Source of the DNA: Malacoraja senta
Taxonomy: Eukaryota
Direction: 5' to 3'
Length of the DNA: 64,000 nucleotides
Assembly (NCBI GenBank): GCA_038087875.1
Contig: CM075981.1
Location: forward strand, 12,524,001-12,588,000
The position numbers were made by a program, and so were the translations under genes. Under the pieces are notes generated by a model, which saw only the letters and a list, made by a program, of their open reading frames with translations, did not search any database and was not told where the DNA came from. Each line of letters opens with the position of its first letter. Within the stretch, counting starts at the first letter, position 1. Shown here piece after piece: positions 30,940 through 61,362 of this stretch.

Positions 30940-33900
30940 GTATGTATAAACTCACAACAATTATGTTTTACTTTGGCAAAGACCAAATAGGAGTGTATAT
31001 ATACACCAGCTGTTATACACCAGCTCTTTGAACATTTTAAGCAAAAGTCTAAGAGGAAATTTGTTCATGCACTGGGCATTCACTTAAAACCCCAGAATAG
31101 AGGACAGGAAAGATAGTACCTTCCATTTTTTAGCAAGAACAACTGAAACGGGCATAAGCAGATGTAATAAGAAGCCTGATGCATGAGGAAGCATTTAGGC
31201 CCCCTCCGCAAGACTGCTCTTTCCCCACACATTGTCATCCCAGACTGTTCTCAGTGAAATCTGTGATAAAGGTTTAGATTTCAACTTCCTGCATGAAGTA
31301 GTTGGCTCATTCATTAGTTTTCATTGCCTAATATCTGAAAAGGAGTGATTTTCAAAAAATAACTACTAATTATTCATGAGCGATTTGTGCCATCTATAGA
31401 CGATGCACGTGTAAGGGGGAAATCGTGGAAGCAATGTGCTATGTACTACAATCCTTTAAAAATGGTTTGCAGGGATGAAAGGTTAAGGAAATAAACTTGC
31501 CCATTTGTGACTGTAGAGTTACAAACTAATGTGACTAATCCTTAACTGGTCTATCAAGTTACCAGTTGAGTCACCTTCTTTTCAGGATGGCACTACAATA
31601 AATACTGATCTAGCCTGATGTACCCATAACCTGAGAATGAATTAAAAAAAAAAATTTTAAACAGTGCAATAACATTTGAAATGTGTGTATCAAAATGTAA
31701 TCCATTTAATTAAAACTTATTACCATCAATTTTATTTCAAAATTCCAAATCAATGTTATTGAAATCAAGCCAATTAATACTTTTATGCCTGGGAGAAAAT
31801 GATGGGTGCAACAACCGAGCTAAATACATTTTCACATAAGACGATATCTGGAAGCAATCCAAGGAAAATTCTTTGCAGGAAAATTAAATACATTTTAACT
31901 GTTCCATTTTGGCAGCTTACTTATTATATGAAACTTTAGCAGGGGTAAAAGTTAAATAAACACATTTGTAATTATAACTTTGAGATATCATCAGCTCATT
32001 TGAAAATATAACTGACACAAGATTAAGCCAAGATAACAGTAAGGGGAATGCATCCAGCTGATTTCAGAACCATCAAGAAAATAACTGTTTTCAAGTGAAA
32101 TGCTGATAACTGACACATGGATCTAATTAACATCATTCAAAACTGCAGCTGACTTGGAACTGATTTAAGTAATGGCAATGTAAAAACTGCTGTGAGGATC
32201 TGCTAGGAATAAAGGAGAATTGTGACCATTAGCACATGGTATCCTTCATGGCACATGGTTCAGTACCCAATTGGTATCCTTCTGTGCTTGTTTGTTCATG
32301 ATGCTGTGAAATAACAATGCAGAGTTATATCCAAAATTATATACCTTATCTTTCCTTCCAATTGGGAAGGTGACTTCTCTTCAATTATCCTTCATAAGCC
32401 AGTTAGCTCACAAAATAACAGAATAATGGCCTGAGACTTCTTAAAGTTAAAACTTACCATGTTTGTGTCTATCTAATAATTTATATGGTGAATAATGGAG
32501 GAAATAAAGAAAGGAATTAAAACTAACAGCAGGGTCTTGACCTGAAACGTCACCTATTCCTTTTCTCCAGAGGTGCTGCCTGACCCACTGGGTTACTTTA
32601 GCTTTTTGTGCCTATCTTCGGTTTAAACCAGCATTTGCAGTTCCTTCCTACACCTTAAAACTAACAAGAAGGATAGAGCTGTCATAGGAAGGTGAGAAGG
32701 AGTCAAGCTGATTATAATCTTAATTCAACTATCGAACTTTCAAGGAAAACAAAGAAAAGTTGACTTTCAGATCTTACAGTCTGTCAATGGCCTTCCTTTC
32801 ACTGTTGTCACTTAAAAGAGTCTGTTAGAGTTAGTCATACAGCACAGCTACATGCCTTTTGGCCCACTGGTCATCAACCAGCCATCTACACTAATCCTAC
32901 ATTTTATGCTCCCCACATTCTCATCAACTCCCCTCAGATTCTACCCCTCACACACACAGTGGGAGGCAATTTAGAGTCCAATTAACCCAATGACCTGCAT
33001 GTCTTTGGGCTGTGGGATGAAACCCGAAGACCTGAGGAAAACTACATGGTCATAGGGAGAATGTGGAAACTCCATACAGTCATTGGCTGAAGTAAGGATT
33101 GAACCTGGGTCTCCGCATTGTGAGGCAACAACTCTACTTGCTGTACCACTGTGTCACCCTAACATGTACAGCAGCCAACTACCTCAGAACAAGACTGCCG
33201 TACTTTGATAAAAGGAAGCAACTGACAGAAAGGAGTTTTCTTGTAAATGAGGAAAACGTGTTTTTCTTTCAGCTCTCTGTGATGGAATTTCTTACTTCTC
33301 TGGTATAAATATTTTCAAATTGTACTCAGAGAAGACATTTTAGGCATATGTGTTTGAAGATATGAATTCATATTTTTATGAGGATTATGTCAGTTGTTTC
33401 CTTTTGTCATAGTATTATTGGAATAGTTTCCTGCCTTATACTTTGACAAAAGGAAGCAACTGTTCTATGTTCTCACCACTCTGGTATTTAACTATGTTAG
33501 GTATTATGTTTTGTACTCCTGTCATATTAATTACACACACACACACACAACCAACCAGTCACACAAACTAGCGTACAAGCACAAACACTTGCAAACACGC
33601 ACAAACACACAAAAGCAAAATGAAGCGCACACAAACTTTCATAAACACAAACACACACATATGCACATAACCAGACACACACATATACTCACAGTTCACA
33701 CATACACAATATCTCTTGCATGGGCATGTTCCCATTTTACCAGATACTTCATTCACTTTTTTTCCTTCTCTTTGTGTCTCTGATTATGATTTCTATAACA
33801 ATGAGAAAAATGATGATGATGATGATGATAATAATAATAATTATTAATTTACATGTAAATAGTATGGCTGCAATTGTTAGCTTACACAAAAAATAAATTA

Positions 33901-36900
33901 TACAAATGACAGAGACCTATTTTTCATGTGGAAGCCTCCACATTGAGTTATAATTAACCATGTCAAAATACATACATGCAGGAGATGAATGTTAAACGAA
34001 GTGCTAAATTACTATTCGAGCCAAATTAGGGTAGTACACTGTACATGGTAATTGTAATAACTATGACCATGTACACCAACTGAAACTGGTTTTCAGGGAG
34101 TTTCAAATTTATTGCTTACATGTACATGTGCACTAACTACTGACTGGAGAGCACCACTAATAATTGTTAAACTGCAATGCTACTGATTTGAAATAACTTA
34201 TCAGTATACAAAATAACACAATTTATCATTCCCCAATAAAAATTCAATCCAATACAGGTTTTATTAAAATCATGTATGGCAGCCAATAGCTGAATAGTAC
34301 GTTTACAGTGAAATGGCATACATTAATAATTCATAATTCACAGTAATTTGAGATAACAATGATGATTACCAATAAAGTATTGCTGCTTAATGAAATCAAA
34401 ATTGGATAATGTGATAATCATAACATACCATGAAATCATATATGTCTATAATTCAAAAGCTAAAATCCAGGGATTTATACATCAAACGTTTCTACAATCT
34501 TATTATGAAAATTAAGTTTACATGCTAAAAGATTATAGATAAGAGAAAGGAGAGAGTATTGGGTAAAATTTCTTAAGCAATGAAAAATCTAATCAATGAC
34601 ATTTGTAAGAACTTCCTACAACACAATTGGACTGTTATTATAATACTGTTATTGCACTGTCGTAAACCATGGATGTATAATAAATAACTTCCTGAAATAC
34701 AATTACGCAAACCAATTTGTATGATAAAGACATAAAGGTGATATTATGGAAATATTAATATGCGTAACAGTACATTACAAAAAAATATCCATCTTAAGAG
34801 CATTTAAGATGAATTTGCTGTACCTACACATGTACACATGGTATAAAACATAACATTTTTACATTAAGGAAAATATTAATGAGTTGAGGAAAAATTAAAA
34901 AGAAAATGCAATAAAGCATTAACCTTGTATGTATATAAATTAGAGGATATTTACTGAGTTGTAACATCTGGAATTGGGAAAAACATTTCATTGTAACTTT
35001 ATGACACATTCAGATTCAGTATCCAGTGTTGAAAGGGCAAGACATTCTCATAAATGCAAGAATTAAACTGTATGTAGTGATAAATTATTGGCACATACTT
35101 TTAGGTGTGAAAAGGGCAGTAATATCTGAAATTGCAAGAGGTCCTGAAAAATATTGCACAAGAACATGAACATAAATGCAGCCAATATTCAGGTTAAATG
35201 AAGTGTAGACAATGGCAAGACAAATGGAAATGCATGAATTCAACAACCCTCCCCACTAAAGAAATGTTTTAATGCATATTATCCTAAAGCAGACAAAGTG
35301 TTCTATTTTGCTTTGGTTTGGTTGTGCTTAATTTTTTGTTAGTTTCAGCACTTTTCTGCTACACAATACACAACTGGAAAAAAAAGTGAGGAGGGGAAGA
35401 TGTGTTTAATTATTTCACCAAGAAAGACACAGAAAGTTTGGAAATTTAAAGTGTTGAGTTTCTAAATCACAAATGGCCATACCACATGTGTCTCTAATCA
35501 ATGTACATGTCCTACAAACGGTTTGCCAAGTACATTGTTTGCCAAGTACATTGCATAAACATTGTTTGCCAAGTACGTTGCATAAACATGCTTGGTCTAC
35601 ATAACTGCACGTGTAGAATACTGCAAAATATTTGTATTTAACATTAACCAGAAAAAAAAGAAGCTTAAACAACATCAAGTCGGATGCTTCATATTATATA
35701 ATGTTCATGACAAAAATCTGATATAAACATTGCCAGACATGTTTGTTGTCCTCGTTGTATGTTTTCACTCATTATCGATGAGATCTTGAGGCTTGATTCT
35801 CGACAATGTCTCTCCAGAACTGACATCTGTTGGGAGGCATGACGGGGCACTGTTTCATCAGGATGTCATTTTTCTTGTTGCTTGGGATTCCCCGTGCACC
35901 ATTCCTTGGGGGAAAGCGCTGCCCATTCAACATCTTCTCAGCCACTTTCTTCTTCTGGAATTCCCCACACGAGAACTCCTCATCGTCGGTCGATGTCTTC
36001 CAGTAGATTTTGCTGGAGCCTCGACGAAACTGAGCAACTCGGACTGTGCTGAGAACCGGTTTGTTGGTGAATCCTGCGCTGCTCATTCCATTCTCCCACA
36101 GACTGAAGTCTGCTGGTCCCATCTGGATGGCAGCACCGTTCTTGTTGACGACTTCTCAAAGTGCCCTTTCTCAAAGTAGTTAAGGGTGACAGTGTTTGCC
36201 CCCCCTCCCCATCCTCATTAACCATGAGCGCCATGCCTGTGAACAGAACCCAGGTCTTATTCTGGGCCGAGCAGTTGTCCACCCAAAATGTGAAGTGCTC
36301 GCAATCCCGGTAGGCCCCGTTTTGACCTTGTCGAACGCACTGACAACATCCTCAGCTTGCCGGCTGGCAATGCCCTCGTGCCAAACTACTCCTACTGGCT
36401 TTCTGTTATTGCCTGCTGCTTTTCCTCCAAGGGGTGCAAATGTCTCATGGAACAAAACAAGTCTGCGTGTGAACATGCATGTCTTCACACCCGGTAGCCT
36501 TGGCAACATGATCACTTTCTGCATGTCCATGGAGAAGAACGCCTCTTTGTCCCCGTGATTCTCTTCACAGTCCTCTCGATATGCCTTCTGGTCCTTCCAG
36601 CATTTTTGTTATGCTCTTTCCATGCTGCACATTTGGTACATTTTGACGTGTCTTCATTGTCGTGTTCTTGTTTGTCATAAATTAGACAGAGCTCACATTC
36701 CTCCTCCCCCAATTTGGCGAAACTAATGTTCAAGCTGTTGACGGTCTTTCTGTATGTGTTGTAACCTGCAACACCCTGGTGTGATTTCTGGAAGTCATGG
36801 TACATTTCTTTAATGCTCAGTTCTGGTGGGAGGTAATTCCTATGCGGAGCATGTTTGTGTCCGTAGTAACTGATGCATGGATTGAAGGAGTTGATGTGGC

Positions 36901-39900
36901 CGGTGATGAGTGTTTAGTTTTCTGCAGAAAGTTTGTGTTTGGGGTCATGGCGTCCTCTCTTGTCATATCTTTGCGGTGATATCTCTCCTGGCATGGCTGA
37001 GTTGAGCGTGACTGTGATGACTTTGTCGCTTGTGTAGCCGAGGTACTCAAGAAAAACTTTTGCATACCATGTGCTGGTGGCCTGTCTCGTCACTGAACCT
37101 GTAGAGACGTGATCTTCTACTTTAGACTCTCTTCCTGCAAAATATTTCTTTAGTTACTAAGGAAGTGAAACACCAACATGAATTTCCAAAAATGAACCAT
37201 TTTATCTAATTTTAAAAAGTTTGAATGTTTCAATAAATATTATTAATAAATGTATTGTTCTTATTTTGATGTAATTTTCCATTTGTTTTAACATGTTTCA
37301 TATGTTTTTATTTTGAGTTTGTTCTCTGTACAATCAGCATATATTGATGATTATAAGTTATGATTTTGTGAAAAAAAATCAGAAATTCATTCACAAAGTA
37401 CCATATTTTTGTGTACCATAAAGTGAATTTTACCTAAAAAGTGGCACATCTTTGCAAATCTGATCCAGATCCTCATACATTTGACATGCTAATGTTCCTG
37501 AGCTTATGTAGTAATGTCAAATGGCACAACAATATTTTTATGTCTTGGTGTAAGATTTCAGTACTTATTTGTGGTCTACAAATGATGCAGGTTACTTACA
37601 AATAAGCTGAGTGTAAATGGAGAGTTCTGCACTTTTGGTAATCTACACCCTTGAGTAGTAGGTGGTCCTGAAACACTACAGCTCTTCTGAAATCCAGCTG
37701 CATATTCAAAAAAGGACTAAAAGTACTGGTGTAACTCGGCGGCTTAGGCAGCATTTCTAGAGAATATGGATAGGTGATATTTCGGCTCGGGACTTTTCTT
37801 CAGACCTGAAATGTCACCTATCCATGTTCTCCAGAGATGCTGCCTAACCCACTGAATTACTCTAGCACTTAGTGTTCTTTTGTGTAAACCAGAATCTGCA
37901 ATTCGGCAATTCCTTGTTTCTACATTCTGCATATTCAAAATGTTTACAGATGTAGGCTAAAATTTCTTGCAATACAGTAATTTCTACTTTGTTTTAATTC
38001 AGAGGTTCTGACTGATCAGATTAGCTACCCACTTCAAGACCCAGAACTACAGATGCCTGCATACAGCCAGTATTCCAACATGCAGTTCTCTACGATGGCA
38101 GCACCTCAGCAGCAGACGCATTATTCTGCTCATAATTATTACCCTCAGTATTCACCAGAAGGACATTATTCTCCAAGCTCATATGAGCTAAACAAACCAC
38201 AGTACTTGGGCCCCAATGTTACAGATGGAGTGATGCCTGTTATGAAAAGACCAAGACTCAACAATTCATCTTTGCGAGTAAAGGGTGAGGAGGAGTTGTG
38301 TGTGGTGTGTGGGGACAAGGCTTCAGGGTATCATTATAATGCACTAACCTGTGAAGGATGTAAAGGTAAGAATTCAAGCCTTTTAAAATATATATTGTAA
38401 TTCATTATCTTCAATATTTTTTCAATAGAAATTTGTACTCACAGCTAAAATGGATCTGTCATGTGTATAGCCTAAGTGATAGAAATTAGTTTGCTTAAGG
38501 CACGACCCTTATGAGTGATTGACAACACTGAGCCTGTACTCGCTGAAGTTTAGAAACATGTGTGGGGGGGGGGGGGGGGGGGAGTCCTCATTGAAACATA
38601 CTAAATAGTTTAAGGCTTGGATAGAGTGGATGTTTCCCCTAGTGGAAGAGTCTAGGACTAGAGATCATAGCTTCAGAATTAAAGGACCTTCCTTTAGGAA
38701 GGAGATGAGGAGGAATTTATTTAGTCAGAGGGTAGTGAATCTGTGGAATCTTTTGCCACAGAGGCTGTGGAGGCCATCCGTAGATATTTTTACGGCATAG
38801 ATAGATATATTCTTGATTAGTACGGGTGTCAGGGATTATGGGGAGAAGGCAGGAGACTGGGGTTAGGAGGGAGAGATAGATCAGTCATGATTGAATGGCG
38901 GAGTACACTTGATGGAATTCTGTTCCTATCACTTATGATCTTATGACGACCCAGCAGGAGGTGTGTGTGGGAGACGGACAGATGGAGTGGGTGGGGAAGG
39001 GAAATAAATTATGTGATAGGGGGCTGGGTTGAAAAGAAGGGTGCTTGTAAGAGCAGGAGTGATGGGAAGCAGGTTACCTGAAATTGTTGAATTCAATATT
39101 TATGCTGGTGGGTTGGCAGAACTACCCAGGCAGAATATGAGGTGTTTCATTGGCCTCATCCTGATAGTGTATGAGACCAATGAAAGGCAGGTAGGTGTGG
39201 AAATGGGAAGAGGAATGGCTTAAAATTGAAAGCTTCAGATTGCCATGGTGGACAGAACGTGGGTGCTCAACATTTGTTCCTGTGCATTGGTATTTAGGCC
39301 CCAATAGTCTACCATGCATGTGTTTCAGAGATCTGTGTAAATGCTCATTTGTGTATTTTGTGCACATATTTTATTGGATGGGTATGTGATTTAGTTTACA
39401 TACTTTTGTTAGCAATGACAAATGCCATTGCTGACACAATGAATTAAGTTACAGCCATACACTGCACATAAAATTAAAACAAAAATTGAACAAACCAGTT
39501 CAATAAACAGACCAGCATTGAAAAATAATTGTTTAGGATGATAATGCTGACTTAGTCAACTCTTATGAGAATAAAAACAACTGAAAATGCCGGAAAAAAC
39601 TGAGCAGATATTGAGAGAGTAACACTGTTAACATATCCGGCTGATGACCTAAAAGTTCAGGTAATTTACCCGAGATATTAATTCCATTTCTTTCTCTGCA
39701 GATATTGCTTGACAATTTCCAACCTTGCAGTATTTTCTGTTTTCCTGTTATCTTTCTGATATCTGCAGCATTTTGTTTTAGTCTTATTTAATTTTGCATT
39801 TTACATCTTGTATATTTTAATATATTTCTGTTTAATCACTGTATTGATGATGTCTTGCAACTATTGGCTTCAGGAGGTTAATGAATAATACATCATGGGG

Positions 39901-42900
39901 GAGCTGAAAATATTCTGTCTTGAAATGTCTCAGGAACAAATGAGGGTAATGCATGTAAACAAATCTACTTCCTACATACCTATATTGTTATATCAGACTT
40001 TAGTGCCAATGAATTGGACTGGCACTACTTAACTAGAAGTCGGGCAGAAAGAATATTACTAGTATGGGAAATGTGAAAAACAGGATTCTATTGTATTTGT
40101 GCCTCCCCATTCCTCACTCTTTGCTCAAATTGACACTGCACACTGCACATGCTTTGAAGGATGTATGCTCATTTGGTGAAACACCAAATGAGCATGAATA
40201 TGCAAGGAAAAAGGATAACACAAGGGAGTGCCACCAAAATGAGCTTTATCATAGGAAAGTCAGGTAAGGACTTTGATGGTGTACATTAGAGAAAAAGGCT
40301 GATGGGCATAAACAAGTGCATTGTAAGAACTACCTCAAGCAGAATGGCAATAAACTTGAAGGTATCCAGTTCCAACATGACAAAAGGCTTTGTGCACTCC
40401 AATTTCATCACTTTCTGTGCATAATAAGCAGTCTTTTCAATCTGTTCATCCGGGGACGCACGCCATACAATATCTAGTGATTGATGTCAAGAGTTTGCAT
40501 TTTGAACAAGTAGCTTCCACACTGTCAGAGGCATTGGAATCCCAGTCAGTAGAATTGAAAGGAGCTTCCAGGATTTCCTATTGTCACCTCCACAGCACCA
40601 GGCTATTGATATGAATGTTTGGCGATAGTTTTAGGAATATGGGTGCAAGATGTCGCACAGCCAACTATATAATGCACATTAACTACATGTATTCTTGAAA
40701 CAGGTAACTCATCAGAAACTCATACATGGCTCTGTTAATTCCGAGCCTGAGAAGTTGATTCATATTGGTAATTTAAAAGGTGTACCTGCAAATATTGTTG
40801 GTGCATCTTGGCAATGTAACCGTTCAGGATCTGCTGATTCTTGATTACCCTGCAATATCTTCTCTCAGTATTTTTCTACAAAAGCATTATTGTGAAGAGC
40901 CGTTCAGCATTACAATTGATCTTGACTTCAGAAATTATATACACGGAGAGAATGAATGAAATAAATATTCTGCTTAAATCAAGAGAAAAGATGGCATTGT
41001 AGAAATGTTCCACTTTGTTCTCATTTTTCTTGAGATATGAAAGATGTAGAAGTAGCGATTTTTAAAAGTATAGATAAGTTTAAAAAATATGTGTAGATCT
41101 GTCTACTTTAAATAATGAATTCTCTATTCAGTGAGATGATTTTATTGTTATAAAATTTAGACCATCCTGTTTTCCAACCAGGATTCTTCCGCCGGAGTAT
41201 CACAAAAAATGCTGTGTACAAATGTAAAACTGGTGGGAACTGTGAAATGGATATGTACATGCGGAGAAAATGTCAGGAATGCCGGCTGAAGAAGTGCAAG
41301 GCAGTGGGAATGCTAGCTGAATGTAAGTAATTAATAAACAGAAAAAAACTTTTATGTTTGAAAATGTATCTTTGCTGATACTTTGGCTTCTGATTTTTTG
41401 GAAAAACACATTAATTTAACACTTTTTAAGATCTCTGGAAACCCCAGAACACTTAACAACCAATAAAGTACTACTGTATTTTAGGAAATATGTCAGCCAA
41501 TTAATAAACAACAAGCTCCAATAAACAGGAAATTGATAATAAACAGACCGTCTGTGTTTAGTAATGTTGATTGAGGATTGAGGATGATGAGCAAATTGGT
41601 CAAATTCCTGCCACAATACTGATCGGCATTGAGCGTATGAGTCAGGAAGTCACATTTAAGTTTTATAAAACATTGGTTGACCCCATTAGGAGTATTGAGT
41701 GCAGTTCTGATTGCACATTGCAGGAAGGACATGGAGGCCTTGGAGAGGGGCAGAAGAGTTTCACCAGATTGGTTGTTAGATTAGAGGGTGTTAGCGAGCA
41801 AGAGAGACCAAACAAATTTAGATTGTTTTCTTTGGAATGTCAGAGGCTGAGAAGAGACCTGATCAAAGTTCATAAAATTATGAGAGGTATAAATAGGATA
41901 GATAGGCAGAATATTTTTCCCAGCGTGAAAATGACAAATAAAAGTGGGCATAGGGTTAAGGCGAGAGGGGAAAGTTTAAAGGAGATGTGTGGGTTACATT
42001 TTTTAAACAGAGGAGCGTGAGATGTGCTATCAGGCTAATCTAGGGCAGGGTAGAGGGTGCCAATCAACAGGAGAATTTAGAGGGAGTGCAAAATAACAAC
42101 TCTAATAATATGCAATCTTTAATTTGGGAAAATATCTCAAGCACTTCACAAGGATCATATCATACAAGATTTGACATTGAACAACTTAAGACTTCATGAC
42201 ACTTGTATTTTATTTCTCTTCTATTTTGGCCATCTCTTTAATGGCACCTCTCTTCCCAGACTTAAGTCATCTGTTTTAACTTTCCATGGTAACATTCCGC
42301 TTTTCTCATCCACTTGTTTTAGATCAGATGATTTTTTAAACAACTCACATCAAAGTTTTTAACTGTAAAACTAAGAAAATTAGAATTTGTTCCAATATAA
42401 TGCTGCAGAGGTAGAAATGAGCAAACTTTTGATGTTGGAATTCACTCTGTGGGAAAAGATGCTTGAGTTTGGAACAGTCTGAATCAAAGCATTAGATTCT
42501 ATGGATTTTCTATGGGAAGAGAGGAGAAGCAGACTACTTTAGGGAAGCCAGACACAAGCAGGTAAGTGTAGAGCGGGAAAAGAAAACAAAAACAGAAACT
42601 ACTGGAGTAATTCAGTGGGTCAGACAGCATCCCTTGAAGACATGGATAGGCGACTTTTTGGGTCAAGACTTCAGACTGATTTCAGGTTTAGATAGGGCAT
42701 TCTTTGAGCTTAGGGCTCTTGCAGATAAGGAAATGATGTTATGGAGCAATTAAAAATAGGATGCCAATCTGCAAGAATCACACAGATATCTTCAAGGTTA
42801 TAGGTTTGGAGGAACATAGGATAGGTATTATGAAGAAATGAAGATTTTAAACTAAAGACATGACTTAAACATAAATTAATATAAATCAAGTATGGAAGAG

Positions 42901-45900
42901 ATGGACAAATGGAACATAGTACAGTACAGTTGTTTAAGAAAGAACTGCTGCTGGAAAAATCGAAGGTAGACAAAAAATGCTGGAGAAACTCAGCGGGTGA
43001 GGCAGCATCTATGGAGAGAAGGAATAGGAGACGTTTCAGGTCGAGACCCTTCTTCATAGTACAGTACAGTATAGGAATGGGTCCTTTGGCCCACAATGTT
43101 TGTGCCCAACATGAAGCCAAGTTAAACTGATTGTACACGATCCCTCTATTCCTTGCACTTCCATGTGCCTATCTAAATGCCTCTTACATGCCACTATCGT
43201 ATCGGCCTCCACCGCTACCCCTGGCAATGCATTCCAGGCCCCTACCATTCTCTGTGCAAAAGAACTTGCTCTGTACATCTCCATGAAACGTTCCCCCTCT
43301 AGCTATGCCCTCTAGTGTTGGACATTATGACCCTAGGAAAAAGATTCCTACTTATATACTTCTATTAAGTCTCCCCTCAACCTCTGACATTCCAGAGAAA
43401 ACAATCCAAGATTGTTGCCTGGAACGCATTGCCAGGGGTGGTGGTGGAGGCGGATACGATAGTGACGTGTTTCACCCAGAGAGTGAGATGAGGAAAATCT
43501 TTTTCACCCAGAGAGTTGTGAATCTGTGGAATTCTCTGCCACAGAATGCAGTGGAGGCCAATTCACTGGATATTTTCAAGAGAGAGTTAGATTTTGCTCT
43601 TAGGGCTAAAGGATATGGGGAAAAAAGCAGGAACGAGATACTGATTTTGGATGATCAGCCATGATGATATTGAATGGCGGTGCTGGCTCAAAGGGCTGAA
43701 TGAATCCTGCACCTATTTTCTATTTTTCTATTATCTAACCTCTTCTTGTGCTGAAACCTTCTTGTCCGGGCAGTATTCTGGAAAACATTATCTACACCCT
43801 CTCCAAATCCTCCAAATCCTTCATGCAACACTCAAATTGTGGCCTAACCTGTCATATAGAGCTGCAATATGACTTCCTGACTCTTATACTCAATGCCCCT
43901 AGCATAGAAGACAAACATACCAGCACGTCAATGTTATCAAGGGTCTTGCCGTTAACTGTGTACTCTCCCCTTACATTCATGCTCCCAAAGTGTAATACCT
44001 TACATTTGCTCTGATTAAACTCTATCTGCCATTTTTTTTAACCATTTCTGCAGGTGATCTATATCCCTATGTATCTTCTGACAGCTTTCCTCACTGTTTG
44101 CAACTTCTCCAATTTTGATGTTCCGCAAACCTACTCACCAACTCATCCACATTTAAATGGAGCATTGTGTTAAAATAATATCTCTTTATTCAGGAATAAA
44201 GGTATTGAGCATTAAATGGTATCTATTAAATTCTTCTAGGTTTGCTAACAGAAATCCAGTGCAAATCTAAACGCCTACGGAAAAACACCAAACAAGTCAT
44301 GGATATTTATTGCAGCATAAAGACAGAGGAAGATGGTGTTGACAGCAAACAGGTTTCATCTACCACAAAGGCTGGAAAGGTAAGATTGTTTGAATTTGAA
44401 GGATAAATATCTCACTTTTGAAAGGGGGATGGCTGAAGGATACATGATACATTTATCAGATTTCTATTTTCATGCAGAAAAGTTGGACATCATCTTTGAA
44501 GAAAATCACATATAAGAATGCTCTGTAAACCTGTGCGTATCTTTTGTGGGATTGACTGTAATTATACAGAGCTGAGACAAACTCTGAGGCCTTCTGGAAG
44601 TGCCATTTAAATATGGTGCACAAGTATCACCTTTTTTTGAGGGCGGACGAGTGGTGCAGCTAGTAGAGCTGGAGATCCCGGTTCAATCTTGACCCTGAGT
44701 GCTGTCTGTGTGGCGTTTGCAGGTTCTCCCTGTGATTGCATGGGTTTTCTCCAAGATCGCAAAGATGTGTGGGTTTATAGGCCTCTGTACAAATTGCCCC
44801 TAGTGTGTAAGGAGTGGATGAGAAAGTGGGATAGCGTACAACTAGTGTGAATGGATGATCAATGGTCAGTGTGGACTCAGTGGGTTGAAGGCCTGTTTCC
44901 ATGCTGTTATTCCTAAACTAAACTTTTACCCTGCTGTTCTATTTTGCCATGGCTGCTTGGCACACATTTTAGCTCAAAATTAAAACAATTATAAATGTTG
45001 TGAATTTCATGCTTGAGATATCTTTTTGAAGAGGTGAATTAGTGGAATATAAGCAGTACAGAGAAAGATCTACATTGATTATTGGAGAAATTAAGAGGAT
45101 CTAATATGGGCAAGTATCCTGTACCTAATAACTTGCATCTCAGTGTTTGGTGATCTTCCAAAATTTCCACAGTTTTCAAACAGTTCCAGAGGTTGGAAGT
45201 AACAAACATAATACTGCTAACATAAGAAAGGAGGGACAGAAAATATAATCGACCAGTCATTTGAATCTGTCCTCAGCACAATATGAAGATCCATCATCCT
45301 GTGCATGGTAAAGAGATATCTAGAAAACATACGATTTGGCAAATCAAACTTATTTTATGACAGGAATCAAACTTATTTTATGACAGGGTCATCGTTTTGG
45401 GTAATTGAGGGTAAAATTCAGGGGGGAATTGTCTAGAATAATTCATATAATTTAAAAAAAAATCCTCAGTTTATTAGAATTACTCTTTATGTCCGTATTA
45501 AGAATAGTAATACTATAAATTCTTAGCCCTGTTATCCATATACCTAGCTCATTATTTACATGTGTATCATTCTCCTGTTCTCTCACTATGAGATAAGTGG
45601 TGAAAATAAAATTTTGAAAAGCCAATACATCTCTCCTCAGAGGGTCAATCCCTATGCTCTCCTTGGGATTTCTCAGTCACGCACGCCTCTAGATTAACTT
45701 TCCTGATATCATGATTTAAGAAGGAGCAAGAAAGGTCTCCTGAATGTAATCCCTGTGTCTTTATTTATCTGTTCAATTAATATATGTGTATAATATGACA
45801 TTACACCATCATTCTGATATTACTTGTGTAATTATTCAGATCAGTAGATGAAGCAAAGGGAATAATAATTCCCTTTTATCTCTGCTATAACTCAATTTGT

Positions 45901-57900: not shown

Positions 57901-58381
57901 TCACTGTTCCCTTTCGGTACATATGACAACACTTGAAAGAAAATTCAGTCATTCTCAATAGTGGGGTTTTCCCGAACTAGTTTCCATAAAACAGATGGCT
58001 ATTTTTTGGGACATTACAAAGTTTTAAAGTTTAACGCCTTGTCTAAAAGATGAATATTTACCTACTGTGCTTGTACTGTTGCAGTAACATTATGCCAATG
58101 ATCATTGTACACAACTTAAAGCTCTTTTTTTTTCTCCTGCAGATCGACCCTATTTAAAGAATAAAACACATGTAGAAAAATTACAGGAGCCTCTTTTGGA
58201 GATTTTACACAAGTACTCCAAGATCCATCATCCCGAGAGTCCGCAGCGCTTTGCTCGGCTTTTGGGTCGACTTACTCAGCTTAGAACTCTTAACCACAAT
58301 CATTCAGAGGTATTAATGTCCTGGAAGATGAAGGATCAGAAACTTACACCCTTGCTCTGTGAAATTTGGGATGTCCAATGA
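30843..58381 (+). CDS. NR1H5: Farnesoid X receptor beta-type nuclear receptor, spliced CDS join(30843..30939,38003..38365,41182..41322,44240..44379,46385..46489,47534..47633,49138..49266,52089..52217,53007..53120,58143..58381), about 518 aa
   Basis: Ten exons with canonical AG/GT ends join in frame (1557 nt including stop). They encode a C4 zinc-finger DBD ([32 protein letters not shown]), a hinge and an LBD ending [14 protein letters not shown] family is certain. Beta assignment rests on [32 protein letters not shown] and the extra LBD exon. Confidence 0.88.
32529..32654 (+). mobile_element. Penelope-derived short insertion
   Basis: TSD TTAAAACTAACA at 32517-32528 and 32655-32666; starts near gggtcttgacctgaaacgtc. 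Confidence 0.75.
32825..33155 (-). mobile_element. Diverged V-SINE
   Basis: Reverse-strand head, V-domain and tail words. Confidence 0.7.
33195..37530 (-). mobile_element. Decayed Sola1-type DNA transposon (extent approximate; transposase remnant 35772-37134)
   Basis: Minus-strand ORF pieces give [77 protein letters not shown] and YFEKGH, broken by frameshifts. Repeated 24-27 bp motifs at 33195-33462 look like a terminus. Confidence 0.7.
33533..33842. repeat. CA-rich low-complexity tract and (GAT)n(AAT)n microsatellite
   Basis: Directly visible. Confidence 0.85.
37712..37926. mobile_element. Penelope-derived fold-back insertion
   Basis: Diverged inverted arms; 14-bp TSD CTGCATATTCAAAA at 37698-37711 and 37927-37940. 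Confidence 0.75.
38003..38365 (+). CDS. NR1H5: FXR-beta coding exon 2 (A/B domain plus first zinc finger)
   Basis: ttcag|AG GTT CTG = [29 protein letters not shown]...[25 protein letters not shown]|gtaaga. Overlaps ORF 38053..38400. Confidence 0.97.
38528..38945 (+). mobile_element. CR1 3' end with long G run
   Basis: Shares the 3' ORF/UTR words of the other CR1 copies. Confidence 0.8.
41182..41322 (+). CDS. NR1H5: FXR-beta coding exon 3 (second zinc finger)
   Basis: accag|GA TTC TTC CGC = [47 protein letters not shown], donor gtaagt; 141 nt. Confidence 0.98.
41590..42020 (+). mobile_element. CR1 3' fragment
   Basis: ORF 41571..42020 ([22 protein letters not shown]). Confidence 0.8.
42931..43054 (-). 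mobile_element. Penelope-derived short insertion
   Basis: 16-bp TSD CATAGTACAGTACAGT at 42915-42930 and 43055-43070; truncated within the hammerhead core. Confidence 0.8.
43071..44160. repeat. Cluster of CR1 3' fragments in both orientations
   Basis: ORFs 43054..43284 (-) and 43305..43664 (+) both carry QRxVxxWNxLP. Confidence 0.75.
44240..44379 (+). CDS. NR1H5: FXR-beta coding exon 4 (CTE/hinge)
   Basis: ttctag|GT TTG = [47 protein letters not shown]|gtaaga. Confidence 0.97.
44641..44925 (+). mobile_element. tRNA-derived V-SINE (HE1-like)
   Basis: Same head, V-domain and tail as 59131-59437. Confidence 0.8.
45420..46030. repeat. Intronic dispersed repeat, copy 1
   Basis: Colinear with 52310-52800 (for example aattcttagccctgttatcca, tccatttccactgcatt). 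Confidence 0.85.
46385..46489 (+). CDS. NR1H5: FXR-beta coding exon 5 (LBD helix 1)
   Basis: tacag|[35 protein letters not shown]|gtaagt; phase 0/0. Confidence 0.93.
47534..47633 (+). CDS. NR1H5: FXR-beta coding exon 6 (LBD helix 3)
   Basis: atcag|[34 protein letters not shown]|gtgagt; 100 nt. Confidence 0.95.
48370..48990 (-). mobile_element. Penelope-like element 3' part (GIY-YIG remnant plus terminal repeat)
   Basis: Minus strand reads [29 protein letters not shown], followed by the same terminal repeat as the short copies. Confidence 0.8.
49138..49266 (+). CDS. NR1H5: FXR-beta coding exon 7 (LBD helices 4-5)
   Basis: ttaag|[44 protein letters not shown]|gtgagt; NR signature [14 protein letters not shown]. 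Confidence 0.95.
50867..51004. mobile_element. Penelope-derived fold-back insertion
   Basis: 13-bp TSD ACAAATAATTCCA at 50854-50866 and 51005-51017. Confidence 0.8.
51330..51970 (+). mobile_element. Old Penelope-like fragment (GIY-YIG remnant)
   Basis: tccaaccttatctattgcattatgtgctccagatgaggcctcttctacataagtgaaaccaagc = [20 protein letters not shown]. Confidence 0.65.
52089..52217 (+). CDS. NR1H5: FXR-beta coding exon 8 (LBD insertion exon, 43 codons)
   Basis: Long pyrimidine tract and ttccag acceptor. Open in phase 1/1: [44 protein letters not shown]|gtacta. Position fits the FXR-beta-specific LBD insertion; the sequence is not conserved enough to confirm by eye. Confidence 0.75.
52310..52800. 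repeat. Intronic dispersed repeat, copy 2
   Basis: Colinear with 45420-46030, same orientation. Confidence 0.85.
53007..53120 (+). CDS. NR1H5: FXR-beta coding exon 9 (LBD helices 7-8)
   Basis: accag|[38 protein letters not shown]|gtaaaa; 114 nt. Confidence 0.96.
53223..53765 (-). mobile_element. Vingi/Ingi-like non-LTR retrotransposon 3' end
   Basis: [19 protein letters not shown]...[19 protein letters not shown]-terminal knuckle; 3' end cattcgtacgaaga. Confidence 0.65.
56037..56423 (+). mobile_element. Short non-autonomous RTE-derived element
   Basis: Starts tgtcgtggtggagaagcttgtg...gagagcgatgc...ctggtagggccaccca, resembling RTE (Expander/BovB-type) 5' UTRs. No ORF; (GAT)n tail. Confidence 0.6.
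58143..58381 (+). CDS. NR1H5: FXR-beta last coding exon (helices 9-12, AF-2)
   Basis: Pyrimidine tract plus ctgcag|[79 protein letters not shown]. Confidence 0.98.
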
Positions 58382-59437: not shown

Positions 59438-60264
59438 CAAAAGTAACACATGGGAATTTGTATTGTCACTGCAAAGTAGGCATGGCAATATATTCATTGT
59501 GTGGTCTTCTAGCTTCACTTTTACGTTTCTTTAAATTGTTTTTCTATAGGTTGATTGTTACAATTGGACCCGGTGTTGGTAAGGCCATACCAGGAGTATT
59601 ATGCACAGTTATGATCCCCTCACCTAAGAGAAGATCAAGTAGCAATGGAGATAGTCCCAAGATATTCACTGCAGTAATTCTTGAAATGAGAGGATTGTTC
59701 TATCGAGATAGATTTGTATTCTTTGGGGTTTAGGAGAATGAAAGATGATCATATCGAAGCAAACAAGATTCCAAGGGGGCATAACATGGTACATATCAAG
59801 ATGTAGTCACTACTGAAAGAATTTTGAACAAGGAGACATAGTTACAAGTTAAGGAGCTGAACTAAAATCCATAGAAATTTCTTCATGCAGAGACTTTAGG
59901 AGACTTGTGCACATTGCAGGATTTCAGCATTCTTAACATTGGAGGTTAACTTGGTAAAAGTGGAGACTGATCAAATTTGAAAGTTTGGGGGGTTTGAGGA
60001 CCATGGTGATCTGATGGAGTGTCTACTCCTGCACCTGTTCTCTTGTGTTCTTGGATTCTTATTTTGTTCTATATTTATTATAGGAGATCACTTAAGAATT
60101 GTGTATGGAGATAAACTTTATTTGTCTCACAATTTTCTTCCCAAACTATTTTAGTGAGCTTTCTGAAAGACAAGTCTGAGCCCTCAGGTTAGGATACCCA
60201 ATGACCAAGGAATATCACAATATATGTCATGGCTGTTAAATGTTAAGAATGCTGATATCCTGCA

Positions 60265-61362
60265 ATGAGAGTAATGGTGGATGGCTGTTTGTCAGGTTGG
60301 AGGCCGGTGACTAGTGGGGTGCCTCAGGGGTCTGTGTTGGGTCCACTGTCGTTTGTCATGTACATCAATGATCTGGATGAAGGTGTGGAAAATTGGATTA
60401 GTAAGTATGCAGATGATACTAAGATAGGTGGTGTTGTGGATAATGAAGTAGATTTTCAAAGTCTACAGAGAGATTTAGGACATTTGGAAGAGTGGGCTGA
60501 AAGATGGCAGATGGAGTTTAATGCTGACAAATGTGAGGTGCTACATCTCGGCAGGACAAATCAAAATAGGACGTACACGGTAAATGGTAGCGAATTGAGG
60601 AATGCAGTTGAACAGAGGGATCTAGGAATAACTGTGCATAGTTCCCTGAAGGTGGAATCTCATGTAGATAGGGTGGTAAAGAAAGCTTTTGGTGTGCTGG
60701 CCTTTATAAATCAGAGCATTGAATATAGAAGTTGGGATGTAATGTTAAAATTGTACAAGGCATTGGTGAGGCCAATTCTGGAGTATGGAGTACAATTTTG
60801 GTCGCCTAATTATAGGAAGGATGTCAACAAAATAGAGAGAGTACAGAGGAGATTTACCAGAATGTTGCCTGGGTTTCAGCAACTAAGTTACAGAGAAAGG
60901 TTGAACAAGTTAGGTCTTTATTCTTTGGAGCGCAGAAGGTTAAGAGGGGACTTGATAGAGGTCTTTAAAATTATGAGCGGGTTAGACAGAGTGGACGTGG
61001 ATAAGCTTTTCCCATTGAGAGTAGGGAAGATTCAAACAAGGGGACATGACTTGAGAATTAAGGGACAGAAGTTTAGGGGGAACATTAGGGGGAACTTCTT
61101 TACTCAGAGAGTGGTAGCTGTGTGGAATGAGCTTCCAGTGGTGGAGGCAGGTTTGATGTTATCCTTTAAAAATAGATTGGATGGGTATATGGACGGGAAA
61201 GGAATGGAGAGTTATGGTCTGAGTGCAGGTAGATGGGACTAGGGGGAAGTATTTATTTTTAATTTAAAAAAAAAAAAAAAAAAAAAATTTAAATGTTCAG
61301 CACGGACTTGAAGGGCCGAGATGGCCTGTTTCCGTGCTGTTATGGTTATATGGTTATATGGT
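60265..61362 (+). mobile_element. Young 5'-truncated CR1 LINE (uninterrupted 325-aa ORF2 C-terminus)
   Basis: GVPQGSVLGP, YADD, FFTQRVV; 3' UTR ending in (tatggtta) repeats. Confidence 0.95.

What the first reader, a model, noticed from the sequence alone, without database searches (positions are those of the whole stretch)
35772..37140. Sola1-type DDD transposase fossil inside a cartilaginous-fish nuclear receptor intron
Seen: the minus-strand fragments join across a few frameshifts into one protein of over 400 aa ([76 protein letters not shown]). It is much more GC/CpG-rich than the host intron and begins at a minus-strand acceptor (ttttgcag, near 37135-37142), so the source gene had introns. 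Established: these motifs match Sola1-type transposases, known mostly from invertebrates. Inference: a relatively recent horizontal acquisition, since CpGs are retained.
Basis: partly seen in the sequence, partly recalled or inferred. Interest (0 to 1): 0.72.

Follow-up and report, generated by a model that had tools for sequence, protein, structure and literature searches.

The report
Dead Sola1-type transposase in FXR intron
A broken 1.3-kb leftover of a cut-and-paste jumping gene of the Sola1 type lies backwards in an intron of the bile-acid receptor gene (FXR) of a cartilaginous fish. Related species carry it at the same place and it drifts neutrally, so it is an ordinary genomic fossil and not a recent arrival.

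Summary
On the minus strand, 35772-37111 carries about 465 codons of one transposase. It is broken by five frameshifts, one in-frame TAA and a roughly 30-codon deletion, and it lacks the first ~188 codons. It is richer in GC and CpG than the flanks (GC 0.49, CpG o/e 0.54 against 0.35-0.37 and 0.21-0.25).

The family is large, with 5378 cluster representatives. Pfam knows it only as DUF7869. It matches the published Sola1 core block by block, but not the Sola2, Sola3, Zator or ISAzo13 cores. It has an RNase H-like fold with an invariant D-D-D. Intact Astyanax copies have 32-bp TIRs and 4-bp TSDs. "Sola1-type" is therefore supported, though I ran no formal profile test against Repbase.

The host gene is FXR/NR1H4-like, on the plus strand. 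The fossil is antisense, about 0.9 kb upstream of the A/B-DBD exon.

Two inferences fail. The "ttttgcag acceptor" lies outside the homology, beside a lineage-specific deletion junction, and relatives have no intron at that position. The insertion is not recent: contigs of two other coded organisms are colinear with fossil and flanks, at 3.8-5% against 2.6-4.4% divergence. Relatives are also common in teleosts. A horizontal origin remains untested.

The scan's notes hold no earlier Sola finding in this genome.

The parts
35772..37111 (-). Whole fossil: remnant of a Sola1-type (DUF7869) transposase coding region, matching residues ~189-675 of a 681-aa intact relative, plus its stop codon
   Evidence: tblastn of P0199 and 300 relatives; word search and profile search; composition
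37056..37109 (-). First surviving piece (RLYRF..VCKS); a frameshift follows at about 37054-37055
   Evidence: Frame translations against the family consensus Y..G....VCKxFFLxTLGY
36917..37054 (-). Piece [19 protein letters not shown]
36914..36916 (-). In-frame TAA stop
   Evidence: marked * in the tblastn alignment
36582..36913 (-). Piece with the SHY..HAP, YLPPEL and [15 protein letters not shown] motifs and the Cys cluster; a frameshift follows near 36582-36590
36324..36581 (-). Catalytic core beta1-alpha1 ([31 protein letters not shown]). The first catalytic D codon is at 36525-36527. A frameshift follows near 36310-36323
   Evidence: D399 of P0199 is invariant and lies on strand beta1 of the model
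36220..36309 (-). Core beta4 ([11 protein letters not shown]). The second catalytic D codon is at 36277-36279. A frameshift follows near 36197-36219
   Evidence: D485-N-C is invariant
36161..36196 (-). Core beta5 ([12 protein letters not shown])
36153..36160 (-). Deletion junction. About 30 codons (P0199 523-552) are missing, including GHTFMSAD with the third catalytic D. Organism C has 90 nt where the window has 22
   Evidence: read laying joint 36138-36161 in X4
35775..36152 (-). C-terminal domain, 126 codons in frame, followed by the stop at 35772-35774
   Evidence: 49% identity to P0199 553-675
37112..37153 (-). Not part of the fossil: AT-rich host intron next to the 5' truncation point. 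It holds the 'ttttgcag' string at 37135-37142
   Evidence: No family homology and a stop codon here. Contigs of organisms C and F leave the window sequence at 37111
38003..38366 (+). Host exon: FXR/NR1H4-like A/B domain and first zinc finger. The fossil lies antisense in the intron upstream
41154..41327 (+). Stop-to-stop frame that holds the next host exon, encoding the second zinc finger; splice boundaries not mapped
58088..58378 (+). Stop-to-stop frame that holds the last host exon (LBD C-terminus, ..LLCEIWDVQ*). It matches the bile acid receptor at E 1.5e-34, against 1.7e-19 for LXR

Best explanation
This is the dead, 5'-truncated remnant of one insertion of a Sola1-type DDD cut-and-paste DNA transposon, from the animal family that Pfam lists as DUF7869. 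It landed antisense in the intron upstream of the A/B-DBD exon of an FXR/NR1H4-like gene. This happened in an ancestor shared with several related species, and it has decayed neutrally since. When intact, such an element is about 4.5-4.7 kb long. It has terminal inverted repeats starting CTGCCC and one gene for a 650-750-aa transposase. The transposase has an RNase H-like core in which three invariant aspartates would bind the metal ions for DNA cleavage and strand transfer (inferred from the fold), and insertion leaves a 4-bp target duplication. The window copy can do none of this. It has lost its termini, about 188 N-terminal codons, the segment with the third catalytic Asp, and its reading frame. 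No function of the remnant for the host gene is indicated.
For: The pieces join to residues ~189-675 of intact P0199 at 48-66% identity. The family has 5378 representatives at E<=1e-3 and 602 at E<=1e-30, with full lengths of 650-830 aa. Relatives hit Pfam DUF7869 only. The core blocks match the Repbase Sola1-1_AP and A. pisum LOC100572977 cores printed in Majorek 2014, supplement file 5. FDLEKVLTTP, YKRK..YN, WDE..KRG, YSDNCGGQNRN and FLERGHTQS correspond to [40 protein letters not shown] and YFE.GHTFMSAD. The Sola2, Sola3, Zator and PF07592 cores in the same file do not fit. In the AF2 model of P0199 (pLDDT 81), D399 is on beta1, D485 at the end of beta4 and D528 at a helix start. VIA-align gives Z 9-10 to retroviral integrase cores (rmsd 2.4 A over 124-130 residues) and Z 9.0-9.3 to Mos1 and Metnase. 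Four Astyanax copies on different chromosome records are 99.3-99.98% alike over 4.7 kb. They have perfect 32-bp TIRs and 4-bp TSDs AATA, TACA, TATA and AATG. The L002 TIR also starts CTGCCCTG and is flanked by AATA/AATT. Orthology and neutrality: contigs of organism C tile 34048-37111 and 37109-38601, and contigs of F tile 34353-37111. Divergence in the fossil is about 4.4% (C) and 3.8-5% (F), against 2.6-3.6% (C) and 4.4% (F) in non-exon flanks. Depth over the fossil equals that of unique flanks. Seven further coded organisms hold 17-25% of its 31-mers.
Against: I ran no formal score against a Sola1 reference, because Repbase and Dfam are not available here and the 2009 and 2011 source papers are not held. 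The Sola1 link rests on five short blocks, DDD and a 4-bp TSD. The AWWT target preference, called a Sola1 hallmark in PMC3845634, is not evident in the five TSDs seen in relatives. The insect Sola1 TIR given there (GGACCG..) differs from CTGCCC... The window copy has no recognisable TIR or TSD, so its mode of insertion is inferred from relatives. Organism names are coded, so I could not convert the age of the shared insertion into years or clades. Foldseek alone gave no PDB match at E<=1e-3.
Confidence: 0.85

Rival explanations
1. The family (DUF7869) is a separate, so far unnamed cut-and-paste superfamily that only resembles Sola1 around the catalytic residues. The fossil would then be a transposase remnant, but not a Sola1.
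For: Pfam gives only a DUF. The termini (CTGCCC..) and TSDs (AATA, TACA, TATA, AATG) differ from the insect Sola1 GGACCG.. and AWWT. No statistical link to a Repbase Sola1 was computed.
Against: Five ordered core blocks, including the rare DNC.GQN.N and GHT signatures, match the published Sola1-1_AP core and not Sola2, Sola3 or Zator. DDD and a 4-bp TSD are the Sola definition.
Confidence: 0.1
2. A recent horizontal arrival. The element would have entered this species' lineage lately, and retained CpG would be the sign.
For: CpG o/e is 0.54 against 0.21-0.25 in the intron. The copy number is very low. In a 56-row tree the fossil falls with snail, brittle-star and unnamed rows, not with the named teleost clade, although that placement is unresolved.
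Against: The same insertion is colinear with both flanks in organism C and with the downstream flank in F. Its divergence is like that of the flanks, and six further organisms hold similar word shares. There are seven disabling lesions and two large deletions, one of them arising after the split from C. CpG is already below the 0.73-0.77 of intact relatives. The nearest database relatives are only 48-66% identical in protein.
Confidence: 0.05
3. An exapted or domesticated piece: a host exon, an antisense transcript, or a regulatory element of FXR kept by selection.
For: It lies 0.9 kb from a coding exon. Contigs of a run guessed to be RNA (X16) cover 34353-37111.
Against: There is no open frame, and the third catalytic segment and the N-terminus are lost. 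Between-species divergence is not lower than in the flanks. The RNA label of X16 is a guess, and its contigs also cover 1.4 kb of plain intron, as pre-mRNA or DNA would.
Confidence: 0.03

Closest known systems
Sola1 group of the Sola superfamily (Bao et al. 2009; Repbase Sola1-1_AP; clade E.10 of Majorek et al. 2014)
   Same: It has a DDD transposase on an RNase H-like core. The five core blocks are in the same order with the same signatures (D-[LM]-[QE]-K..P; W.E...[GK]R; DNC.GQN.N; GH[TS]). Relatives have a 4-bp TSD and TIRs. Element size in relatives is 4.5-4.7 kb (bivalve Sola1 mean 5.4 kb, PMC10294476).
   Different: The third block reads GHTFMSAD, not GHTQS or GHSR. Termini start CTGCCC, not GGACCG as in the insect Sola1 MITEs. 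The TSDs seen are A/T-rich but not AWWT. The copy here is a truncated fossil without ends.
DUF7869-domain proteins of teleosts, e.g. Astyanax mexicanus LOC111196652 (P0265)
   Same: Same family (P0199 against P0265: 42% identity over 575 residues, E 4e-142), with the same core motifs.
   Different: The Astyanax element is intact and multi-copy, with near-identical copies, perfect TIRs and TSDs. It sits in the other major clade of the tree. The window copy is dead and effectively single-copy.
Retroviral integrase and Mos1/Metnase catalytic cores (solved structures)
   Same: The RNase H-like fold aligns at Z 9-10. The acidic residues sit on beta1, after beta4 and on the following helix.
   Different: Sequence identity is only 7-11%. 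The third residue is Asp, not the Glu of integrases. The N- and C-terminal domains are unrelated.

Membership tests
Sola1 (Sola superfamily) | RNase H-like catalytic core with a D-D-D triad | tested here: met
   D399, D485 and D528 (P0199 numbering) are invariant in 47 full-length relatives. They lie on beta1, at the end of beta4 and at the start of the next helix in the model. The fold matches integrase and Mos1 cores at Z 9-10. In the fossil, D1 (36525-36527) and D2 (36277-36279) survive and D3 is deleted.
Sola1 (Sola superfamily) | Sequence similarity to reference Sola1 transposases | tested here: met
   Block-by-block comparison with the Sola1-1_AP and LOC100572977 cores printed in Majorek 2014 supplement file 5. 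All five blocks match in order. This was by inspection only; no E-value was computed, because no reference sequence is available by id.
Sola1 (Sola superfamily) | 4-bp target site duplication | tested here: met
   Met in relatives only. All four Astyanax copies have exact 4-bp TSDs (L010 5634-5637 and 10334-10337, and likewise L009, L011, L012). The L002 flanks are AATA/AATT. It cannot be tested on the window copy, whose ends are lost.
Sola1 (Sola superfamily) | AWWT target preference (called a Sola1 hallmark in PMC3845634) | tested here: inconclusive
   Five TSDs in two relatives: AATA, TACA, TATA, AATG and AATA/AATT. They are A/T-rich, but only one may fit AWWT. The sample is too small and comes from lineages 40-50% identical to the fossil.
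Sola1 (Sola superfamily) | Terminal inverted repeats on this copy | tested here: inconclusive
   The only candidate pair (35255-35270 / 37139-37154, 16 nt) has no TSD, and 9 of 100 shuffles give as many matches. No CTGCCCT terminus lies in the right orientation near the fossil. The 5' end was removed by a deletion.
Pfam PF25273 DUF7869 | Score above the gathering threshold (26 bits) | tested here: met
   Relatives P0051 (40.7 bits), P0064 (40.4), P0066 (29.2), P0028 (29.4) and others pass. The frameshifted window pieces give no hit at E<=1, as expected for a domain split over three frames with a deletion.
Sola2, Sola3, Zator, ISAzo13 (PF07592) | Their published core motifs (e.g. DFAEN / TDGCAGQYKN / SHG for Sola2; SDNASSYHGN for Sola3) | tested here: not met
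   Cores read in Majorek 2014 supplement file 5 do not fit the family consensus. No PF07592 hit in 8 full-length relatives.
Superfamilies with Pfam models (hAT, Tc1/mariner, PIF/Harbinger, piggyBac, MULE, P, CMC, Transib, Merlin, Ginger/rve) | Hit to the family's Pfam transposase domain | tested here: not met
   No such hit at E<=0.01 in 16 relatives. The 4-bp non-TTAA TSD also excludes most of them.
NR1H4 / FXR (host gene) | zf-C4 DNA-binding domain split over two exons, and an FXR-type ligand-binding C-terminus | tested here: met
   zf-C4 at E 5e-10 and 2e-15. The last exon matches the bile acid receptor at E 1.5e-34, against 1.7e-19 for LXR.

The most novel reading that the evidence does not exclude
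The skate lineage may have received this Sola1-like lineage horizontally from a marine invertebrate. In the tree the fossil falls among snail, brittle-star and unnamed rows, not in the teleost clade. The invasion would have failed almost at once, leaving essentially one copy that has sat in the FXR intron since before the related species split.
Probability: 0.15. Interest if true: 0.3.

Novelty: new member of a known kind. Interest (0 to 1): 0.12.

Why it matters
It matters little by itself. It is one more decayed DNA-transposon copy in an intron, from a superfamily already routinely annotated in fish genomes (FishTEDB lists Sola consensus sequences, PMC6404401). There are two modest by-products. 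First, the large DUF7869 family can be read as Sola1-type transposases, which gives that Pfam domain of unknown function a probable meaning. Second, Astyanax mexicanus carries near-identical, structurally perfect copies that look recently active. For the FXR gene the fossil is a neutral marker, and could be used as a presence/absence character among skates.

Tried and rejected
- Pfam on the six stop-to-stop pieces found nothing.
- Rfam over the whole window found nothing.
- A 16-nt inverted pair at 35255-35270 / 37139-37154, sitting exactly at the GC boundary, was rejected as a TIR: no TSD, 9 of 100 shuffles give as many matches, and the upstream arm lies outside the homology.
- A search for the relatives' CTGCCCT terminus near the fossil found none in the right orientation.
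- Element ends in L003-L008 (relatives from ENA assemblies) could not be defined. Their flanks form a mosaic and there is no clean TIR.
- The N-terminal ~188 codons were looked for elsewhere in the window as an upstream exon, by tblastn with 207 relatives. Only one marginal, unrelated hit appeared.
- Bao et al. 2009 and Yuan & Wessler 2011 are not held, so the Sola1 reference core was taken from the Majorek 2014 supplement.
- Foldseek against PDB gave no match at E<=1e-3. The VIA second look was used instead.
- The ESM Atlas was busy twice.
- The listing of cluster members returned no organism names for ten top hits.
- I left the third word search unused. A. pisum Sola1 references would rank below the 120 rows shown, so it was unlikely to pay for its cost.
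- For the tree only, the fossil pieces were joined inside a script with X at every break.
Full report
**What is there**

On the minus strand between 37111 and 35772 the three frames hold pieces that join into one protein. In order, they are:

- RLYRF..VCKS (37109-37056), followed by a frameshift.
- [19 protein letters not shown] (37054-36917), followed by an in-frame TAA (36914-36916).
- A piece with YLPPEL and [15 protein letters not shown] (36913-36582), followed by a frameshift.
- [25 protein letters not shown] (36581-36324), followed by a frameshift.
- [11 protein letters not shown] (36309-36220), followed by a frameshift.
- [12 protein letters not shown] (36196-36161), followed by a deletion with a frame change.
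- 126 in-frame C-terminal codons (36152-35775) and the stop.

The block has GC 0.49 and CpG o/e 0.54. The 5-kb flanks have GC 0.35 and 0.37 and CpG o/e 0.21 and 0.25.

**Family**

Pfam finds nothing in the broken pieces. A word search with the piece 36183-36608 gave 49 relatives, the best at 65% identity. Some carry PF25273, DUF7869.

A profile of those hits, searched against 1.84 billion cluster representatives, found 5378 proteins at E<=1e-3 and 602 at E<=1e-30. Full-length members are 650-830 aa.

The nearest intact one is P0199 (681 aa). It aligns to the window over its residues 212-675 at 48-66% identity. By eye the match reaches back to about residue 189.

Named members come from five teleosts (Astyanax, Phoxinus, Leuciscus, Coilia, Pogonophryne), a brittle star, two gastropods and a beetle. 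Atlas clusters are mostly arthropod and mollusc. So the family is animal-wide and well represented in bony fishes.

**Is it Sola1?**

The original Sola papers are not held. However, supplement file 5 of Majorek et al. 2014 (PMC3985635) prints the RNase H-like cores of Repbase Sola1-1_AP and an A. pisum protein as clade E.10. PMC5751038 equates E.10 with Sola1.

All five blocks correspond, in order, to the consensus of 47 full-length relatives:

| Sola1-1_AP core | Family consensus |
|---|---|
| FDLEKVLTTP | [10 protein letters not shown] |
| YKRK..YN | TRRLV.FHETF |
| WDE..KRG...I..C | WHEGISGRNAED.AS |
| YSDNCGGQNRN | DNCSAQNKN |
| FLERGHTQS | YFE.GHTFMSAD |

The Sola2, Sola3, Zator and PF07592 cores in the same file do not fit. 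Sixteen relatives hit no other Pfam transposase domain.

An AlphaFold model of P0199 built on that alignment (pLDDT 81) shows the canonical beta1-beta2-beta3-alpha1-beta4-alpha2-beta5-alpha core. The invariant D399 lies on beta1, D485 at the end of beta4 and D528 at the start of the next helix. VIA-align gives Z 9-10 to retroviral integrase cores (rmsd 2.4 A over 124-130 residues) and Z 9.0-9.3 to Mos1 and Metnase. Foldseek alone stayed just above E 1e-3.

The transposon hallmarks could be read in a relative. Four Astyanax loci on different chromosome records are 99.3-99.98% identical over 4.7 kb. Each element (for example L010:5638-10333) ends in perfect 32-bp inverted repeats starting CTGCCC. 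Each is flanked by an exact 4-bp duplication: AATA, TACA, TATA or AATG. The element around P0199 has 34-nt inverted repeats that also contain CTGCCCTG, with AATA/AATT beside them.

DDD plus a 4-bp TSD is the Sola definition (my recollection of the Bao et al. 2009 abstract). The AWWT preference that PMC3845634 calls a Sola1 hallmark is not evident in these five sites. I leave that feature as inconclusive.

Overall, "Sola1-type" is well supported. It rests on inspection and architecture, not on a computed score against a reference library.

**Host gene and position**

The plus strand carries these host coding segments:

- An exon at about 38003-38366 encoding the A/B region and first zinc finger.
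- A second-finger exon within the open frame 41154-41327.
- LBD exons downstream.
- A last exon, within the frame 58088-58378, ending ..LLCEIWDVQ*.

The zf-C4 domain scores E 5e-10 and 2e-15. The last exon matches the bile acid receptor at E 1.5e-34, against 1.7e-19 for LXR.

The exon at 38003 starts at an acceptor in mid-protein. From my own knowledge of human FXR isoforms, this corresponds to the junction ..G|VLTEQ. So the fossil, 0.9 kb upstream and antisense, is intronic.

Earlier scan notes call the genome a skate. I did not test that, and the run names are coded.

**The "acceptor" inference**

The string ttttgcag is at 37135-37142, but homology ends at 37109-37111. In contigs of organisms C and F the alignment to the window stops at 37111. 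The contigs then continue for 679 and 487 nt that the window lacks. A second contig of C resumes the flank at 37109.

The missing ~188 codons amount to 564 nt, so the window lineage has most likely deleted the 5' part of the element. No relative's N-terminus matches anywhere else in the window.

In P0199 the equivalent position lies inside one uninterrupted 681-codon ORF. In Astyanax the only intron follows codon 22, about 240 codons upstream of that point. The acceptor-like string is therefore plain intron sequence beside a deletion junction.

**Age and origin**

One organism, probably the source species, holds 67-84% of the fossil's 31-mers. Seven more coded organisms, from ten studies, hold 17-25%, which corresponds to roughly 95% identity.

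Laid on 33800-38800, contigs of organism C tile flank, fossil and flank colinearly, and contigs of F tile 34353-37111. Substitution differences are about 4.4% (C) and 3.8-5% (F) in the fossil, against 2.6-3.6% (C) and 4.4% (F) in non-exon flanks. Depth over the fossil equals that of the unique flanks, whereas true repeats nearby reach 10^5-10^6.

So the insertion is orthologous, older than the split of these species, effectively single-copy, and unconstrained.

One lesion is younger than that split. Where the window has 22 nt (36139-36160), organism C has 90. This is exactly the place where about 30 codons with the third catalytic Asp are missing.

CpG o/e of 0.54 lies between the 0.73-0.77 of intact relatives' ORFs and the 0.21-0.25 of the intron. 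That is partial decay, not freshness.

A 56-row tree places the fossil, without support, among snail, brittle-star and unnamed rows and outside the named teleost clade (fossil pieces joined with X at breaks). This neither shows nor excludes a horizontal origin.

**Verdict**

This is an ordinary, old, neutral fossil of a known kind of transposon. The scan's notes hold no earlier Sola or DUF7869 finding in this genome.

Noticed in passing
L009-L012 (Astyanax mexicanus; element e.g. L010:5638-10333): There are four copies of a 4.7-kb DUF7869/Sola1-like element on different chromosome records, two of them 99.98% identical. They have perfect 32-bp TIRs, exact 4-bp TSDs and an intact 740-aa gene with one intron after codon 22. 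The element looks recently or currently active in the cavefish.
   Followed up: partly
window 37641-37974 and 38476-38800: Two extremely abundant repeats, with summed contig depth of 10^5-10^6 in all four organisms laid. The first holds 82-nt inverted arms (37707-37788 / 37803-37884) and has about 11 partial copies in the window. They lie on either side of the FXR A/B-DBD exon.
   Followed up: partly
window 60256-61239 (+): An open 328-codon reverse-transcriptase fragment (..YADDTKIGG..) of a LINE, downstream of the last FXR exon. Related C-terminal LINE fragments are at 41571-42017 and 43287-43661.
   Followed up: no
window 34353-37111: Contigs of a small run guessed to be RNA (X16, organism F) cover the fossil and 1.4 kb of intron on its downstream side, but not the other flank. 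This could be pre-mRNA, an antisense transcript or DNA carry-over.
   Followed up: no
L001:5790-6950: Another organism's assembly (ENA, unnamed) holds a similarly frameshifted fossil of the same family, with CpG o/e 0.55. It shares 78.5% nucleotide identity with the window over only 107 nt of the core.
   Followed up: partly
L002:253-2730: An intact 825-aa hAT-like ORF (DUF4371, FAM200-ZBED5 RNase-like, Dimer_Tnp_hAT) lies next to the intact Sola1-like element that encodes P0199.
   Followed up: no
window 35530-35610 (-): A short tandem direct repeat (about 2.5 copies of a ~27-nt unit, GTTTATGCAA.GTACTTGGCAAACAAT) lies 170-240 nt after the transposase stop. It could be a subterminal repeat of the element's 3' non-coding part, but this was not shown.
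   Followed up: no
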